A program made the position numbers and the translations under genes. A DNA stretch of 64,000 bases from Diadema antillarum (taxonomy: Eukaryota): positions 3,844,001 through 3,908,000 of the forward strand of contig NW_027270946.1 in assembly GCF_040938485.1 (NCBI RefSeq), in the 5' to 3' direction. The notes under the pieces were generated by a model. That model ran no database searches and was not told where the DNA came from. It saw only the letters and a list, made by a program, of their open reading frames with translations. Positions 1 through 3,868 of the stretch are shown one piece after another. Numbering within the stretch: position 1 is the stretch's first letter; the number at the start of each line of letters is the position of its first letter.

Positions 1-2
1 TG

Positions 3-194
3 GGGAGGGGTTATGACCGCCGAACATCACATTCCAACCCCATGGCCGGTTCATCTGCACAGCCTTTTTTAGGGAAGGCTTGGAGGGGGAGACCTCGAGA
101 TCCTCCTCACACTTACACACCGACAGCAGCAAGGGAGGGTGGCAACAAGCAGCCAACCTACCACAGGCAGAGCCAAAGCCAGGGGAGGAAATAG
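3..194 (+). CDS. C-terminal end of DIRS gag-like ORF (partial)
   Basis: Open frame GRGYDRRTSHSNPMAGSSAQPFLGKAWRGRPRDPP...QSQGRK* ending at TAG 192-194; low-complexity R/G/P/Q tail overlapping the start of the pol frame. Confidence 0.6.
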   Translation, partial: GRGYDRRTSHSNPMAGSSAQPFLGKAWRGRPRDPPHTYTPTAAREGGNKQPTYHRQSQSQGRK

Positions 195-2140
195 AACAGG
201 TAGGTGACTATGAACACAACATAGATAACGATCTAGTTACAACACCAGCTGTCGTCGGAGGTCGTCTGAAGCCATTTTTCCCTGCTTGGGAAAATATCAC
301 GAGAGACTCACACATTATTCAAGCAGTTCAAGGCTATACAATAGAATTTGACTCAGAAAAATTTCCCCCTTCTCGAGAAAAACCTCTGCGCTCTTACAAG
401 CGGAATGCTGAAGAAACAGCCAAGATTGACCATGAGATTCTGGTTCTGGAAGAAAAACAGGTCATTGAAAAATGTGCCCATGAAGAAGGGGAATTTATTT
501 CAGAGGTTTTCACGAGACCAAAAAAGAATGGAGGAGTTCGATTAATTCTTGACCTGTCCGAACTCAACAAAAGTGTTCAGTACCAACACTTTAAAATGGA
601 TAATATTCAATCTGGTATTCTACTCCTCTCAAAAGGGTGTTATATGGCTTCAGTAGACCTCCGTGATGCATACTACACAATTCCCATTCACTTAGACTCT
701 CGTAAATATCTCCGCTTCGTATGGAGAAACCAATTGTGGCAGTTCAAAGCTTTGCCAAATGGCTTATCTTCCGCCCCAAGACTGTTCACCAAAATACTAA
801 AACCAGTGCTTGCCTTACTAAGACAACAGGGGCACACAGTTTTGTCGTACTTGGACGACACACTGATAATTGGGAACAATAAAGCAGACACTCGCTCAGC
901 AGTGCAAGCCACCACTGACCTTTTGACTAGTCTAGGGTTCATTATTCACTCAGAGAAATCGGTACTTGAACCATCCCGTGAGATTGAATTTCTGGGTTTC
1001 CATTTAAATACATCTGAAATGAGAATCACCCTCCCAGCCAGTAAAAGCAATGACATTCAAGATGCATGTCGATCCTTACTTGCTAATAACAAACCTAGTA
1101 TCCGGGAGGTAGCTAAAGTCATTGGGAAGATTGTGGCTGCCTTACCAGCATCTCAGTACGGCCCCTTGCATTACAGGCAGCTGGAAAGGGAAAAAATCAG
1201 AGCCCTGAGAAAACAGAAAGGACATTTCGATAGACATATGAGCCTATCAAATAGAGCCAAGGCGGAACTAGTTTGGTGGTCATCCCATGCACATCTCGTG
1301 TCTAAACCCCTGTACCCAGGGAAAGTATCAAAAGAAATAAGAACAGATGCTAGTGGACAAGGTTGGGGTGCCACAGACCTGCAATCCAAGACAGGTGGTA
1401 GATGGAATGCTCAAGAATTAGCAAGAGCAGCAGGTAATGAAATAAACTATCTGGAAATGCTAGCAGCCGGTTTGGGACTCAAAAGCTTCTGTTCAAATGT
1501 CAGAGATGCACATATACTGTTGAGATTAGACAACACCACAGCGGTGACATACTTGAATAACATGGGCGGCGTCAAGTCTGAAGCATGTAACGAAATGGCG
1601 TTGCAAATTTGGGATTGGTGCAGTAGACGACAAATTTGGATAACAGCATCTCACTTAGCAGGCTCTAAGAACACAGAAGCTGATACGATGTCAAGGAAAT
1701 TCAATGACAATATAGAATGGATGCTAGACAAGACAATATTCAATGAGATAGTGCAGAGGTATGGGTTACCAAACGTAGACCTTTTTGCCACCAGACTGAA
1801 TGCCCAGCTCCCAACATACGTCTCCTGGAGACCAGATCCAGGGGCATGGGCAGTAGACGCATTCACTATTGACTGGGGACCCCTAGTATTTTATGCGTTT
1901 CCCCCATTTAGCTTGGTTGCAAAGTGTCTCCAAAAAATCAGACAAGATGGCGCTAGGGGAATTTTGATAGTGCCAAATTGGCCAACACAGCCCTGGTATA
2001 CCGTACTACGTAACATGCTATTGGAGGAGCCCTGGGTATTGCGAAAACACCAGTTGTTAACCCAACCCATTACAGGTAGACCCCATCCACTTACACATCT
2101 CTCCCTCTTATGTTGCAGGGTTGGAGCAAACATTTCATAG
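80..2140 (+). CDS. DIRS pol: reverse transcriptase, RNase H and methyltransferase-like domain
   Basis: RT motifs ILDLSELN, VDLRDAY, LPNGLSSAP, YLDD. RNase H motifs TDAS, INYLEM, LDNTTAV, NTEADTMSR. MT-like motifs VDLFATRLN and YAFPPF. The frame is open from 17 but has no ATG until inside RT; the start at 80 is TTG. Confidence 0.95.
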   Translation: MEGETSRSSSHLHTDSSKGGWQQAANLPQAEPKPGEEIEQVGDYEHNIDNDLVTTPAVVGGRLKPFFPAWENITRDSHIIQAVQGYTIEFDSEKFPPSREKPLRSYKRNAEETAKIDHEILVLEEKQVIEKCAHEEGEFISEVFTRPKKNGGVRLILDLSELNKSVQYQHFKMDNIQSGILLLSKGCYMASVDLRDAYYTIPIHLDSRKYLRFVWRNQLWQFKALPNGLSSAPRLFTKILKPVLALLRQQGHTVLSYLDDTLIIGNNKADTRSAVQATTDLLTSLGFIIHSEKSVLEPSREIEFLGFHLNTSEMRITLPASKSNDIQDACRSLLANNKPSIREVAKVIGKIVAALPASQYGPLHYRQLEREKIRALRKQKGHFDRHMSLSNRAKAELVWWSSHAHLVSKPLYPGKVSKEIRTDASGQGWGATDLQSKTGGRWNAQELARAAGNEINYLEMLAAGLGLKSFCSNVRDAHILLRLDNTTAVTYLNNMGGVKSEACNEMALQIWDWCSRRQIWITASHLAGSKNTEADTMSRKFNDNIEWMLDKTIFNEIVQRYGLPNVDLFATRLNAQLPTYVSWRPDPGAWAVDAFTIDWGPLVFYAFPPFSLVAKCLQKIRQDGARGILIVPNWPTQPWYTVLRNMLLEEPWVLRKHQLLTQPITGRPHPLTHLSLLCCRVGANIS

Positions 2141-3120
2141 CTCAAGGACTGACGGAGGAGACTGCTGATATAATGGCAGCGTCTTGGAGGAAATCCACCA
2201 AGGAGCAGTATATGGTGTATATTAGGAAGTGGCAAAGGTTTTGTCATGAGCGTCACTTATGTTGGACCCATACGAAGGTGGGAAATTTGTTTGCGTTTTT
2301 TAATTCTATGTACAAAAATGGAGCAAGCTACAGCACCTTGAATACATCAAGGAGCGCACTAGCATCAGTTGTTCTTCTACGGGACGAGAAATACACCATT
2401 TCTACACATCCTTGGATTTCCCGGTACTTCAGGGGCATTTTTAATCTCCGACCACCCACTCCGAGATACAGCTTCATATGGGATGTGGGCAAGGTGCTGA
2501 GCTACCTCAGACAAGTAACTCCAGCTCATAAGATTTCGCTGTGTCAACTGACACACAAAGTATGTTTTTTACTAGCGTTGACTTCTGCCCAAAGAGTGCA
2601 AACACTTTCATACCTAACCCTTGACAATGTGAAGGCGTCCAAAGATTGTGTGGAAATAGCAGTGGCTGATTTGATAAAGCAGAGTCAACCTGGGAATGTG
2701 GGAGTGAAAGTAACACTGAAAGCCTTTCCCGAGGATAAGAAACTCTGTGTTGTACACTATGTTAAAGAATACATTAACAGAACAAGCACATTGAGGAAGG
2801 AGGTGAATGCACTATTTGTCACCTACAAGCAACCCCATGGGAAGGCATCAAAGCAAACCATCGCTCGATGGATAAAAACTGTGTTGAGAGCATCAGGTAT
2901 CGACACCGATCTCTTCAAAGCACATTCAACGAGATCGGCGGCAACCTCATCTGCCAAGAGGAATCATTTTCCAATAGCAGACATTCTCAAGCATGCTGGG
3001 TGGAAAAATGAATCCACGTTCAGGAATTTTTACCTTAAACCGGCATCCCAGGCAACATCTTTTGGACAAGCAGTTCTGGGACAACAGACCTCTAGGAAGG
3101 GACAAGATTCAGTCCTGTAA
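2110..3120 (+). CDS. DIRS tyrosine recombinase (YR)
   Basis: LALTSAQRVQTL (Arg), AHSTRSAA (H-x-x-R), HAGW, FRNFY (Tyr); 336 aa stop-free, overlapping the pol end by 31 nt in the -1 frame. Confidence 0.95.
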   Translation: MLQGWSKHFIAQGLTEETADIMAASWRKSTKEQYMVYIRKWQRFCHERHLCWTHTKVGNLFAFFNSMYKNGASYSTLNTSRSALASVVLLRDEKYTISTHPWISRYFRGIFNLRPPTPRYSFIWDVGKVLSYLRQVTPAHKISLCQLTHKVCFLLALTSAQRVQTLSYLTLDNVKASKDCVEIAVADLIKQSQPGNVGVKVTLKAFPEDKKLCVVHYVKEYINRTSTLRKEVNALFVTYKQPHGKASKQTIARWIKTVLRASGIDTDLFKAHSTRSAATSSAKRNHFPIADILKHAGWKNESTFRNFYLKPASQATSFGQAVLGQQTSRKGQDSVL

Positions 3121-3197
3121 ACATAGGTAAAGTTGCCCAAAAACTTTCTCTGACAATATATTTCTGTGAAAAATGACTACTGTGAAAATCTTTGAAG

Positions 3198-3346
3198 TCT
3201 CATATTACGCAAATTCAGCCAATGGCTAATGCGCAGCCAATGGCTGAATTCTCTACCGTACATTACGAGATAAAATAGAAAATTAAATGAAAAACATTGA
3301 AATTTAATTTGTATTTTATGAGTAATGGGAGGATAGAGAATTCAGC
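3198..3346. repeat. DIRS internal complementary region (ICR)
   Basis: 3198-3255 is a 58-bp direct repeat of 3474-3531; 3275-3346 is the 72-bp reverse complement of 3519-3590. Confidence 0.85.
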
Positions 3347-3473
3347 ACCCTCCGCTCCCTCCCTTACTCTGAACAGCCTTAAATGTGGCTTATACAAGAT
3401 CTATTTTATCTCGAAATATTTTTTTCACAGTAGTCATCAGCTTTTAAAGATGGCGATTGCGCGCGGAACGGCC

Positions 3474-3590
3474 TCTCATATTACGCAAATTCAGCCAATG
3501 GCTAATGCGCAGCCAATGGCTGAATTCTCTATCCTCCCATTACTCATAAAATACAAATTAAATTTCAATGTTTTTCATTTAATTTTCTAT
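3474..3590 (+). repeat. Outer part of DIRS right ITR plus right extension
   Basis: Complementarity to the ICR stops at ...AATTTTCTAT (3590), which defines the element's 3' end. Confidence 0.8.
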
Positions 3591-3643
3591 CAAGACACAC
3601 ACCTAGGGCACTTAGGAAAGAAGGGACACTGTCAGAGATATGT

Positions 3644-3868
3644 TACTGTATACGCTGTTATTTTCGCGTACGGATATTTTCGTGAATGACGAGGTCACAG
3701 TCATTTTCGCGAGATGTTGTTTTCGCGAATCGACGCCGATGCTTACGTTAATGCACTGTTAACAAAGCGCACTGAGACATTTTCACATGTTGTTAAATTC
3801 ACGATCCAACTGTGATTCGCAAAATTAAAGAGAATTAAACCCTCGCGAAAATAACAGCTTATACAGTA
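3644..3868. mobile_element. MITE with TA-CTGTA...TACAG-TA termini
   Basis: TIRs TACTGTATACGCTGTTATTTTCGCG / CGCGAAAATAACAGCTTATACAGTA (one mismatch); internal TTTTCGCG motifs. Confidence 0.85.

What the first reader, a model, noticed from the sequence alone, without database searches (positions are those of the whole stretch)
197..2124. Predicted intron removes the whole RT/RNaseH/MT region and fuses the frameshifted frame to the tyrosine recombinase
Seen: donor CAG|GTAGGT at 199/200, five nt after the gag stop (192-194) and phase 0 in the pol frame. At the other end are a branch-like CTTAC (A2093), an AG-free pyrimidine tract ACATCTCTCCCTCTTATGTTGCAG and an acceptor at 2118/2119, phase 0 in the YR frame. 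Splicing out 200-2118 (1919 nt) gives ...KPGEEIEQ|GWSKHFIAQGLTEETADIMAASW..., fully in frame. Inference: unspliced RNA yields Gag and Gag-RT-RH-MT, spliced RNA yields Gag and Gag-linker-YR, so one slippery site and one intron would set the levels of both enzymes and could tether the recombinase to Gag for packaging. This would address how the overlapping third ORF is translated. Matching phases alone have a 1-in-3 chance, so the case rests on the joint strength of the signals.
Basis: partly seen in the sequence, partly recalled or inferred. Interest (0 to 1): 0.78.

Follow-up and report, generated by a model that had tools for sequence, protein, structure and literature searches.

The report
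Spliced-out polymerase gene in DIRS retrotransposon
A sea-urchin DIRS retrotransposon carries a real, conserved intron that removes its whole reverse-transcriptase gene and joins the stretch just after gag in frame to its recombinase, which probably explains how these elements make the recombinase.

Summary
Observation confirmed and interpretation supported at the RNA level. Window 1-3590 is the 3' 3.6 kb of a DIRS1-like element of a Diadema sea urchin (98.8% identical to a D. antillarum copy).

- **Signals.** Donor CAG|GTAGGT (199/200) and acceptor TTGCAG|GG (2118/2119) sit as described. Each is the best-scoring site of its kind in the element (1 of 145 GT, 1 of 243 AG). Phases are 0/0.
- **RNA.** In polyA RNA-seq raw reads of the same species, the only joint found over 3.7 kb is this one. 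It skips 1919 nt with GT..AG ends: 4 reads, 3 start points, 64-nt anchor, one run of three.
- **Conservation.** The element-wide best donor lies 5-42 nt after the gag stop in 11 of 16 DIRS families. It is an island of conservation in an unconserved linker. TTGCAG| is invariant at the start of the recombinase (YR) frame in eight elements.
- **Inferred, not shown.** Pol has no start codon of its own and needs the conserved in-phase slip site in exon 1. Ribosomes that shift on spliced RNA should therefore read into YR and make Gag-linker-YR.
- **Not excluded.** Genomic intron-less copies as the source of the junction reads, and separate YR initiation.

I found no paper describing native DIRS splicing. 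The scan noted the same idea on other copies of this genome.

The parts
1..194 (+). C-terminal end of gag (frame 3), cut by the window edge; stop TAG at 192-194
   Evidence: Translation. It is homologous to the tail of the 443-aa gag ORF of the full-length D. antillarum copy L001 2755-4086.
65..71 (+). -1 slippery heptamer U UUU UUA in gag phase, shifting into the pol frame; it lies in exon 1 and is kept in the spliced RNA
   Evidence: CC TTT TTT AGG (QPFLGK) is conserved in phase in L002, L010 and L011. L013 has A AAA AAC in phase instead. The first Met in the pol frame lies inside the RT domain.
17..2140 (+). pol frame (frame 2): linker, reverse transcriptase, RNase H and methyltransferase; stop TAG at 2138-2140
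   Evidence: translation has no internal stop. Pfam RVT_1, E 6e-23.
197..205 (+). Splice donor CAG|GTAGGT, with exon 1 ending at 199
   Evidence: best of 145 GT sites. Junction reads. Conserved as AG|GTRRGT in 12 elements while the flanks are unconserved.
200..2118 (+). Intron of 1919 nt holding the whole RT/RH/MT coding region
   Evidence: joint 196->2116, 'skips 1919, GT..AG (cut +3)', which equals 199->2119. Run X11, 3+1 reads, 3 start points, 64-nt shorter side.
2090..2094 (+). Branch-point-like CTTAC (A2093), 25 nt upstream of the acceptor AG
   Evidence: Similar yTnAy motifs sit at -22 to -28 in relatives. Not tested functionally.
2095..2118 (+). AG-free pyrimidine tract and acceptor TTGCAG|
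   Evidence: best of 243 AG sites. TTGCAG| is invariant in 8 elements. It is the element-wide rank-1 acceptor in the window family, L002, L011, L018 and L019 and in L010, and rank 2 in L013.
2119..3120 (+). Exon 2: tyrosine recombinase reading frame (frame 1), stop at 3118-3120
   Evidence: Pfam Phage_integrase E 1e-11 and Phage_int_SAM_1. 98% identical to a D. antillarum protein. Protein conservation among relatives starts right at the acceptor.
2110..2112 (+). ATG of the annotated YR ORF (MLQ), lying inside the intron; candidate start on unspliced RNA
   Evidence: ATG is kept in L002, L015 and the proteins P0007/9/10/15. It is GTG in L011, TAT in L010 and GGC in L013.
2173..2175 (+). First in-frame ATG of exon 2 (A at -3, G at +4); candidate start for a free YR on spliced RNA
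   Evidence: The equivalent position is Ile in P0007/9/10/14/15 and GTG in L010.
3198..3590 (+). 3' repeat region: internal complementary region and right terminal repeat; the element ends near 3590
   Evidence: Direct repeat 3198-3314 / 3474-3590 and a 72-nt perfect inverted repeat 3275-3346 / 3519-3590. Both are reverse-complementary to the left terminus of L001 (2521-2626), and homology to L001 ends at 3590.

Best explanation
The element is a DIRS1-like tyrosine-recombinase retrotransposon with a genuine U2-type GT-AG intron at 200-2118. The intron contains the entire RT/RNase H/methyltransferase gene.

**Two RNAs.**
- Unspliced RNA is the genome and the messenger for Gag. After a -1 shift at U UUU UUA (65-71), it also encodes Gag-Pol.
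- A fraction of transcripts is spliced just after the gag stop. This gives a short gag-YR messenger that keeps gag, the slip site and the 43-codon linker. The recombinase frame now follows the linker in phase.

**Translation of the spliced RNA.** Most ribosomes stop at the gag TAG. Those that shift frame read across the junction and make Gag-linker-YR.

**Status of each step.**
- Shown: the signals, their rank within the element, the junction in RNA, and their conservation and phase in relatives.
- Inferred: that frameshifting occurs, that the fusion protein is made and used, and that the donor sits within 50 nt of the gag stop so that this stop escapes nonsense-mediated decay.

My odds are about 0.85 that the intron is real and selected. 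They are about 0.55-0.6 that the Gag-linker-YR fusion is the functional product.
For: **RNA.**
- In polyA RNA-seq raw reads of the same species, the only joint reported over window 1-3700 is 199->2119, with GT..AG ends. It has 4 reads, 3 start points and a 64-nt anchor, and it sits exactly at the site predicted beforehand.
- In that run, depth rises from about 5 in the last intron bin to 19-35 in 2109-2480.

**Signal strength.** The donor is the best of 145 GT sites and the acceptor the best of 243 AG sites.

**Donor conservation.**
- In 11 of 16 DIRS families with a recognisable gag, the element-wide best donor lies 5-42 nt after the gag stop. A 40-nt window in about 4.2 kb would hold it about 1% of the time by chance.
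- The donor is in phase 0 of pol in 9 of those families. In the other two, L018 and L019, the best-scoring donor is phase 1.
- The donor core carries 1.51 bits per position against 0.33 in the flanks.
- Val-Gly changes to Val-Ser (GTAGGT, GTGAGT, GTTAGT) while +5 G and +6 T are kept. This fits a nucleotide constraint rather than a protein constraint.

**Acceptor conservation.**
- TTGCAG| is invariant, in phase 0 of YR, in eight elements at 40-100% YR identity.
- Intron lengths of 1919, 1907, 1901 and 1898 nt are all 2 mod 3.

**Translation logic.**
- The pol frame has no Met before the RT domain.
- The slip site is conserved in phase, and L013 has a different canonical heptamer in the same place. 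Frameshifting is therefore needed for Pol anyway, and its signal stays in exon 1.
- YR protein conservation begins at the acceptor, upstream of ATG 2173. That ATG is Ile in several relatives.
Against: - **Thin RNA support.** There are only 4 junction reads, in one of three runs, with about 12% of each run read. The library looks unstranded.
- **No DNA control.** Table 5b was not given, so transcribed genomic intron-less copies are not excluded.
- **Depth profile.** Depth does not fall directly after the donor; it stays near 15 until about 750. The reads come from several family copies.
- **Coding overlap.** Both sites lie in coding sequence. The acceptor overlaps the conserved pol tail HLSLLCCRVG and the YR start MLQ.W, so its conservation is confounded.
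- **Alternative start.** The ATG 2110 equivalent is kept in several relatives.
- **Exceptions among relatives.** In L018 and L019 the strongest donor lies 4 nt downstream of the in-frame one and would be out of frame. Five of 16 families lack a top-ranked donor at this place.
- **Unspliced contigs.** All eight assembled contigs of the 68% relative, and L097, are unspliced at the acceptor.
- **Method limit.** My site-scoring matrices are heuristic, built from remembered metazoan frequencies.
- **No protein data.**
Confidence: 0.7

Rival explanations
1. The intron is real and makes a gag-YR messenger, but YR is translated as a free protein rather than as a Gag fusion. It would arise by termination-reinitiation or leaky scanning. 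In this family that would use AUG 2173, which lies 59 nt after the gag stop once the RNA is spliced. The matching phase would then be coincidence.
For: - After splicing, the gag stop lies only 5-42 nt from the junction.
- ATG 2173 has a good context.
- In L010 and L013 an ATG follows the junction within 5-9 codons.
- In L051 and L097 an acceptor-like AG is followed at once by the YR ATG.
- Phase match alone has a 1 in 3 chance, and it is inherited rather than independent among relatives.
Against: - Residues between the junction and ATG 2173 (W..F..QGL(T/S)..DI) are conserved as protein.
- The ATG 2173 equivalent is Ile in P0007/9/10/14/15. L015-type elements have no early Met after the junction.
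- If the slip site works, as Pol needs it to, shifted ribosomes on spliced RNA must read into YR.
Confidence: 0.2
2. The junction is not a product of current, adaptive splicing. On this view the four reads come from genomic deletion derivatives or from template switching at the CAGG microhomology. The 'signals' are by-products of coding constraints. YR is made from ATG 2110 on unspliced RNA or on an internally initiated RNA.
For: - Few reads, in one run, with no DNA control.
- Four nt are shared at both junction sides.
- The acceptor overlaps two conserved reading frames.
- MLQ is conserved in many relatives.
- Assembled contigs of relatives are unspliced.
- The sharp depth rise at 2109, with only 4 junction reads, could reflect an internal start.
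Against: - The joint falls exactly on the predicted GT..AG pair and is the only joint in 3.7 kb. It has three start points and 64-nt anchors.
- CAG|G microhomology is what consensus splice sites produce.
- The donor is conserved in an otherwise unconserved linker and survives an amino-acid change.
- It is the element-wide best donor in 11 of 16 families.
- ATG 2110 is lost in L010, L011 and the intact L013.
- No cluster of read starts or loose ends was reported near 2110.
- Even DNA copies with this exact deletion would imply past splicing.
Confidence: 0.07
3. The splicing is real but works against the element. The host spliceosome would use cryptic sites to remove pol and disable transcripts, and the product would have no role for the element.
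For: Spliced forms that disable transposons are known in other systems (my own knowledge, for example spliced LINE-1 RNAs). The spliced fraction here looks like a minority.
Against: Cryptic, harmful sites should decay. Instead they are the best sites in the element and are kept across families at 40-68% YR identity. The donor always lies just after the gag stop, and the phase is compatible with YR.
Confidence: 0.03

Closest known systems
DIRS1-like tyrosine-recombinase retrotransposons (DIRS-1 of Dictyostelium; SpDIRS1-type elements of sea urchins)
   Same: It has gag, an RT/RH/MT pol, and a tyrosine recombinase whose ORF overlaps pol. It also has inverted terminal repeats with an internal complementary region (PMC3266345, PMC5633606).
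   Different: The papers I could search describe overlapping ORFs but no native intron and no route to YR translation. The 2011 overview (PMC3266345) contains neither 'intron' nor 'splic'. The only DIRS-1 splicing in PMC7192593 concerns an artificial marker intron.
Retroviral subgenomic spliced mRNAs (env; foamy-virus pol) and gag-pol -1 frameshifting (my own knowledge)
   Same: A full-length RNA serves as genome and as gag/gag-pol messenger, and a spliced subgenomic RNA expresses a downstream gene. The slippery heptamer U UUU UUA is the same as at HIV-1 gag-pol.
   Different: Here the donor lies after gag, not in the leader, so gag and the frameshift signal stay in the spliced RNA. The downstream enzyme is placed in the frameshifted frame. 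The gene removed is the polymerase itself.
Drosophila copia 2-kb spliced RNA and plant Copia elements such as BARE (my own knowledge)
   Same: An LTR retrotransposon uses splicing that removes pol sequence to adjust the ratio of Gag to enzymes.
   Different: In those elements the spliced RNA yields Gag only. Here it also brings a second enzyme, the recombinase, into a translatable position.
Long pol/YR ORF overlap of many DIRS1-like elements (PMC3266345)
   Same: In the long-overlap families found here (L023, L044, L064, L096), the YR frame opens exactly at a strong acceptor-like site in the pol motif YAFPPF|S. That site is in phase with the post-gag donor.
   Different: This family has a short overlap and uses a different acceptor 207 nt further downstream. 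The YAFPPF site may score well only because of the protein motif. There is no RNA evidence for it.

Membership tests
DIRS1-like retrotransposon | pol with reverse transcriptase (plus RNase H and methyltransferase-like region) | tested here: met
   Pfam RVT_1, E 6e-23, in ORF 80-2140. MT-type motifs DLFA..., YAFPPF and NWPTQPW are visible. The MT domain has no Pfam hit.
DIRS1-like retrotransposon | Tyrosine recombinase instead of a DDE integrase | tested here: met
   Phage_integrase E 1e-11 and SAM-like N-domain. 139 YR relatives were found.
DIRS1-like retrotransposon | Inverted terminal repeats plus an internal complementary region near the 3' end | tested here: met
   Window 3198-3346 and 3474-3590 are repeats of each other and reverse-complementary to the left terminus of the full copy L001. 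The left end itself lies outside the window.
Spliceosomal (U2-type GT-AG) intron | GT..AG boundaries with consensus donor, pyrimidine tract and branch-like motif | tested here: met
Spliceosomal (U2-type GT-AG) intron | The exact junction is present in RNA | tested here: met
   4 reads with 3 start points in run X11. There were none in X9 or X10, where depth at the donor was only about 2-6.
Spliceosomal (U2-type GT-AG) intron | The joined form is absent from genomic DNA (removed at the RNA level) | not testable with these tools
Spliceosomal (U2-type GT-AG) intron | The sites are conserved in relatives beyond what coding explains | tested here: met
   For the donor: an island of conservation that survives a Gly/Ser change and ranks first in 11 of 16 families. 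For the acceptor: invariant TTGCAG|, but confounded by dual coding.
Programmed -1 ribosomal frameshift (gag to pol/YR frame) | X XXY YYZ heptamer in the zero frame within the overlap | tested here: met
   U UUU UUA at 65-71 in gag phase. It is conserved in L002, L010 and L011, and L013 has A AAA AAC.
Programmed -1 ribosomal frameshift (gag to pol/YR frame) | Downstream stimulatory RNA structure | tested here: inconclusive
   The fold of 60-199 gives -43.3 kcal/mol with z = -2.35. No clear spaced hairpin or pseudoknot was defined.
Programmed -1 ribosomal frameshift (gag to pol/YR frame) | Frameshifted protein product | not testable with these tools
   No proteomic or ribosome-profiling data were available.

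The most novel reading that the evidence does not exclude
Excising pol by splicing, combined with a single shared -1 frameshift site, may be the ancestral and general way that metazoan DIRS1-like elements express their recombinase. On this reading:

- YR is made as a Gag-linker-YR fusion that is packaged with the RNA.
- The long pol/YR ORF overlaps seen in many families exist because the acceptor sits at the YAFPPF|S motif.
- The donor is held within 50 nt of the gag stop to avoid nonsense-mediated decay.
- Spliced RNAs, which keep both termini, seed non-autonomous gag-YR copies.
Probability: 0.4. Interest if true: 0.85.

Novelty: new variant of a known kind. Interest (0 to 1): 0.78.

Why it matters
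How DIRS elements translate their third, overlapping ORF has been left open. The papers I could read describe the overlap but give no mechanism (PMC3266345, PMC5633606, PMC7192593).

A conserved intron that swaps the polymerase for the recombinase behind one frameshift site would give a concrete, testable expression logic for a whole order of retrotransposons. It would have several further consequences:

- It would add a third design to the known retroelement uses of splicing. The first two are the retroviral env messenger and the copia gag messenger.
- It would suggest that the recombinase travels with Gag.
- It would predict gag-YR deletion copies in genomes.
- It matters for annotation. Gene predictors and TE libraries treat these elements as intron-less.

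Tried and rejected
- **Spliced ORFs in the protein collection.** I looked for YR proteins carrying the linker at their N-terminus. None was found. The longer YR hits (P0025, P0029-36, P0044-46) carry the alternative-frame reading of the MT motif, meaning they come from unspliced DNA.
- **Spliced contigs in assemblies.**
  - L003-L009 are collinear with L002.
  - L097 is unspliced.
- **P0021.** This gag-YR chimera joins mid-gag to mid-YR, not at these sites.
- **Canonical -1 slip site in the pol/YR overlap (2080-2140).** I considered this as an alternative route to a Pol-YR fusion. No X XXY YYZ heptamer is present.
- **Other copies in the window.** There are none.
- **Loci without DNA.** Four ENA loci (P0010, P0014, P0015, P0019) returned no DNA.
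- **Automatic frame test.** My first automatic pick of 'best acceptor near the YR start' gave 11 of 37 in frame, which is chance level. In distant families the search window was misplaced and many copies are degenerate. I therefore do not use that count. I report per-family inspection instead.
- **Literature.** Six searches found no native DIRS splicing.
Full report
**What is in the window.**

Window 1-3590 is the 3' part of a DIRS1-like retrotransposon; the window edge cuts its gag.
- The gag frame ends at TAG 192-194.
- A second frame, open from 17 to TAG 2138-2140, carries a reverse transcriptase (Pfam RVT_1, E 6e-23) and the RNase H and methyltransferase-like region.
- A third frame (ATG 2110 to 3120) is a tyrosine recombinase (Phage_integrase and the SAM-like N-domain).
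- The 3' end holds the repeats expected of DIRS elements. There is a direct repeat at 3198-3314 / 3474-3590 and a perfect 72-nt inverted repeat at 3275-3346 / 3519-3590. Both are reverse-complementary to the left terminus of a full-length copy.

The host is a diadematid sea urchin. The YR is 98% identical to a Diadema antillarum protein. Window 1-3590 is 98.8% identical to a 4.96-kb copy in a D. antillarum contig, L001.

**The observation.**

- The donor is CAG|GTAGGT, with exon 1 ending at 199. That is five nt after the gag stop and phase 0 in the pol frame.
- CTTAC lies at 2090-2094, followed by an AG-free pyrimidine tract.
- The acceptor is TTGCAG|GG, with exon 2 starting at 2119, phase 0 in the YR frame.
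- 1919 nt are skipped.

These are not ordinary motifs within the element. Of 145 GT sites in 1-3200, this is the only one matching 8 of 9 consensus positions. Of 243 AG sites, it has the most pyrimidine-rich tract, with YAG|G and an AG-free zone.

**RNA evidence.**

No run on record as RNA held the sequence in the index. Three 2026 polyA RNA-seq runs of the same species label were offered as raw reads. I laid these, plus one contig run, on window 1-3700 at 90% likeness.
- The only joint reported anywhere in the 3.7 kb is '196->2116, skips 1919, GT..AG (cut +3)'. That is 199->2119, the predicted junction.
- It is seen in run X11, with 3+1 reads, 3 start points and 64 nt on the shorter side.
- X11 is the run with the highest expression, with depth about 16 over exon 1. 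X9 and X10 have depth about 2-6 at the donor, and only about 12% of each run was read. Their silence therefore says little.
- In X11, depth rises from about 5 in 1985-2108 to 19-35 in 2109-2480. This fits extra RNA that begins at the acceptor.
- Depth does not drop right after the donor. Many fixed differences show that the reads come from sister copies rather than from this locus.
- The library looks unstranded.
- The table that would say whether the joined form also exists in DNA runs was not given.

**Relatives.**

A word search with exon 2 alone found 139 YR relatives. I obtained DNA for these elements:
- a 68% relative, L002;
- a second 68% relative, L011/L012;
- a 56% relative, L010;
- an intact 47% relative present in two assemblies, L013/L014;
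- 80 further DIRS loci from a metagenome-collection scan.

In L002, L011, L010 and L013 the whole layout recurs.
- There is an in-phase slippery heptamer. It is U UUU UUA in three of them and A AAA AAC in L013.
- The gag stop follows. Then, 17-26 nt later, comes a donor in phase 0 of pol: AAG|GTAGGT, AAG|GTAGGT, GAG|GTGAGT and AAG|GTTAGT.
- TTGCAG| lies in phase 0 of the YR frame.
- Intron lengths of 1907, 1901 and 1898 nt are, like 1919, 2 mod 3.

**Is the conservation more than coding?**

For the donor, yes.
- Stacking 12 elements in register, the nine donor positions carry 1.51 bits each. The 51 flanking positions carry 0.33.
- The two codons after the junction change from Val-Gly to Val-Ser while keeping G at +5 and T at +6.
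- Among 16 families with a recognisable gag ORF in the +1 frame relative to pol, the best donor of the whole element lies 5-42 nt after the gag stop in 11. By position alone, about 1% each would be expected. The families share ancestry, so this shows maintenance rather than independent origin.

For the acceptor the case is confounded.
- TTGCAG| is invariant in eight elements. It is the element-wide best acceptor in six of the seven short-overlap elements scored and second best in L013.
- However, it lies inside the conserved pol tail (HLSLLCCRVG) and the YR start (MLQ.W).

My scoring matrices are heuristic and come from remembered metazoan frequencies. The ranks, not the scores, are the result.

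**Exceptions and extensions.**

- L018 and L019 have two overlapping donors, GAG|GTAG|GTRAGT. The upstream one is homologous to the window's and is in frame. The stronger one lies 4 nt downstream and would be out of frame.
- Five of 16 families have no top-ranked donor at this place.
- In families with a long pol/YR overlap (L023, L044, L064, L096), the best acceptor is the pol motif YAFPPF|S (TATGCTTTTCCCCCCTTTAG|). It is in phase 0 of YR, and the YR frame opens exactly or almost exactly there. This would explain the long overlaps noted in PMC3266345. The motif is pyrimidine-rich for protein reasons and I have no RNA for it, so it is a lead only.
- An automatic in-frame count over 37 loci gave chance level (11 of 37). 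Windows were misplaced in distant families and many copies are broken, so I do not rely on that count.

**How it most likely works.**

The pol frame has no Met before the RT domain, and the slip site is conserved in phase. Pol must therefore be made as Gag-Pol by a -1 frameshift. This is an inference from sequence, in line with what is established for retroviral gag-pol.

The donor lies 128 nt downstream of the slip site, so the spliced RNA keeps gag, the slip site and the linker. Any ribosome that shifts on the spliced RNA then reads ...KPGEEIEQ into GWSKHF..., because the phases match.

Two further observations favour translation entering from upstream rather than from an internal AUG.
- YR protein conservation begins at the acceptor, upstream of ATG 2173.
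- That ATG is Ile in several relatives.

The rival start, ATG 2110, lies inside the intron. It is kept in many relatives, which weighs against the fusion model. It is lost in L010, L011 and the intact L013.

The gag stop is always less than 50 nt from the junction. On the established 50-55-nt rule, this would spare the spliced RNA from junction-dependent nonsense-mediated decay. This is my inference and is untested in sea urchins.

The spliced RNA keeps both termini. It could therefore be copied in trans into gag-YR deletion elements. That is both a prediction and the main caveat for the junction reads.

**What is known.**

Six literature searches found no description of native splicing in DIRS elements.
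- The 2011 overview of DIRS1-like elements mentions ORF overlaps but never 'intron' or 'splic'.
- The Dictyostelium papers use only an artificial marker intron.

Splicing that yields subgenomic messengers is well known for retroviruses and copia-type elements (my own knowledge). I therefore class this as a new variant of a known kind.

The scan's notebook shows that the same idea was raised on two other copies in this genome, and that other follow-up agents accepted it (s1-229757, s1-224546). Those are unchecked AI notes. I tested the claim independently here.

**Limits.**

- Four reads in one run, with no DNA control and no protein data.
- The junction-sequence search and any engineering of an active element were left out and are listed as referred steps.

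**Verdict.**

| Question | Result |
|---|---|
| Observation | confirmed |
| Interpretation at the RNA level | supported |
| Gag-linker-YR fusion | probable but unproven |
| Interest | 0.78 |

Noticed in passing
window 3644-3688: A 45-nt stretch just outside the element has RNA depth of 40-70 in all three RNA runs. It shows fixed differences at 3653, 3672 and 3673, and the reads run on into unrelated sequence on both sides. It looks like a piece of an abundant expressed repeat.
   Followed up: no
P0021 (573 aa): A database protein joins the N-terminal half of a DIRS gag in frame to the middle of a Strongylocentrotus-like YR. Its YR part is near-identical to that of P0020 (one residue differs in the part I compared). 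It is either a gene-model chimera or a deletion copy. The joint is not at the splice sites studied here.
   Followed up: partly
L018:1800-1820 and L019:1742-1762: Tandem donors lie 4 nt apart (GAG|GTAG|GTRAGT). The upstream one is in frame with YR. The stronger, downstream one ends exon 1 on an in-frame TAG of the gag frame.
   Followed up: partly
L023:3055-3075, L064:3129-3149, L096:5025-5045, L044:4371-4391; window 1891-1911: The pol motif YAFPPF|S encodes a strong acceptor-like site. In long-overlap DIRS families the YR frame opens exactly or almost exactly there, in phase with the post-gag donor. In the window it is the second-best acceptor, but the YR frame is closed after it.
   Followed up: partly
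L051:6124-6146 and L097:400-424: In two further families an acceptor-like AG is followed immediately by the YR ATG. This would suit reinitiation on a spliced RNA.
   Followed up: no
L013:1486-1492: This intact 47% relative uses A AAA AAC, in gag phase, 12 nt after the pol frame opens. It stands where the window family has U UUU UUA.
   Followed up: partly
L010:1200-1330; L011:3227-3245; L001:5000-5800: Several relatives are broken copies. L010 has a frame change in the gag tail, L011/L012 have a truncated pol, and L001 has pol in three frames.
   Followed up: partly
one search hit list (P0114): Animal DIRS recombinases turn up in records labelled as bacterial MAGs (Candidatus Thiodiazotropha taylori) and in TARA and JGI metagenome contigs. 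This is presumably host or larval DNA in those samples.
   Followed up: no
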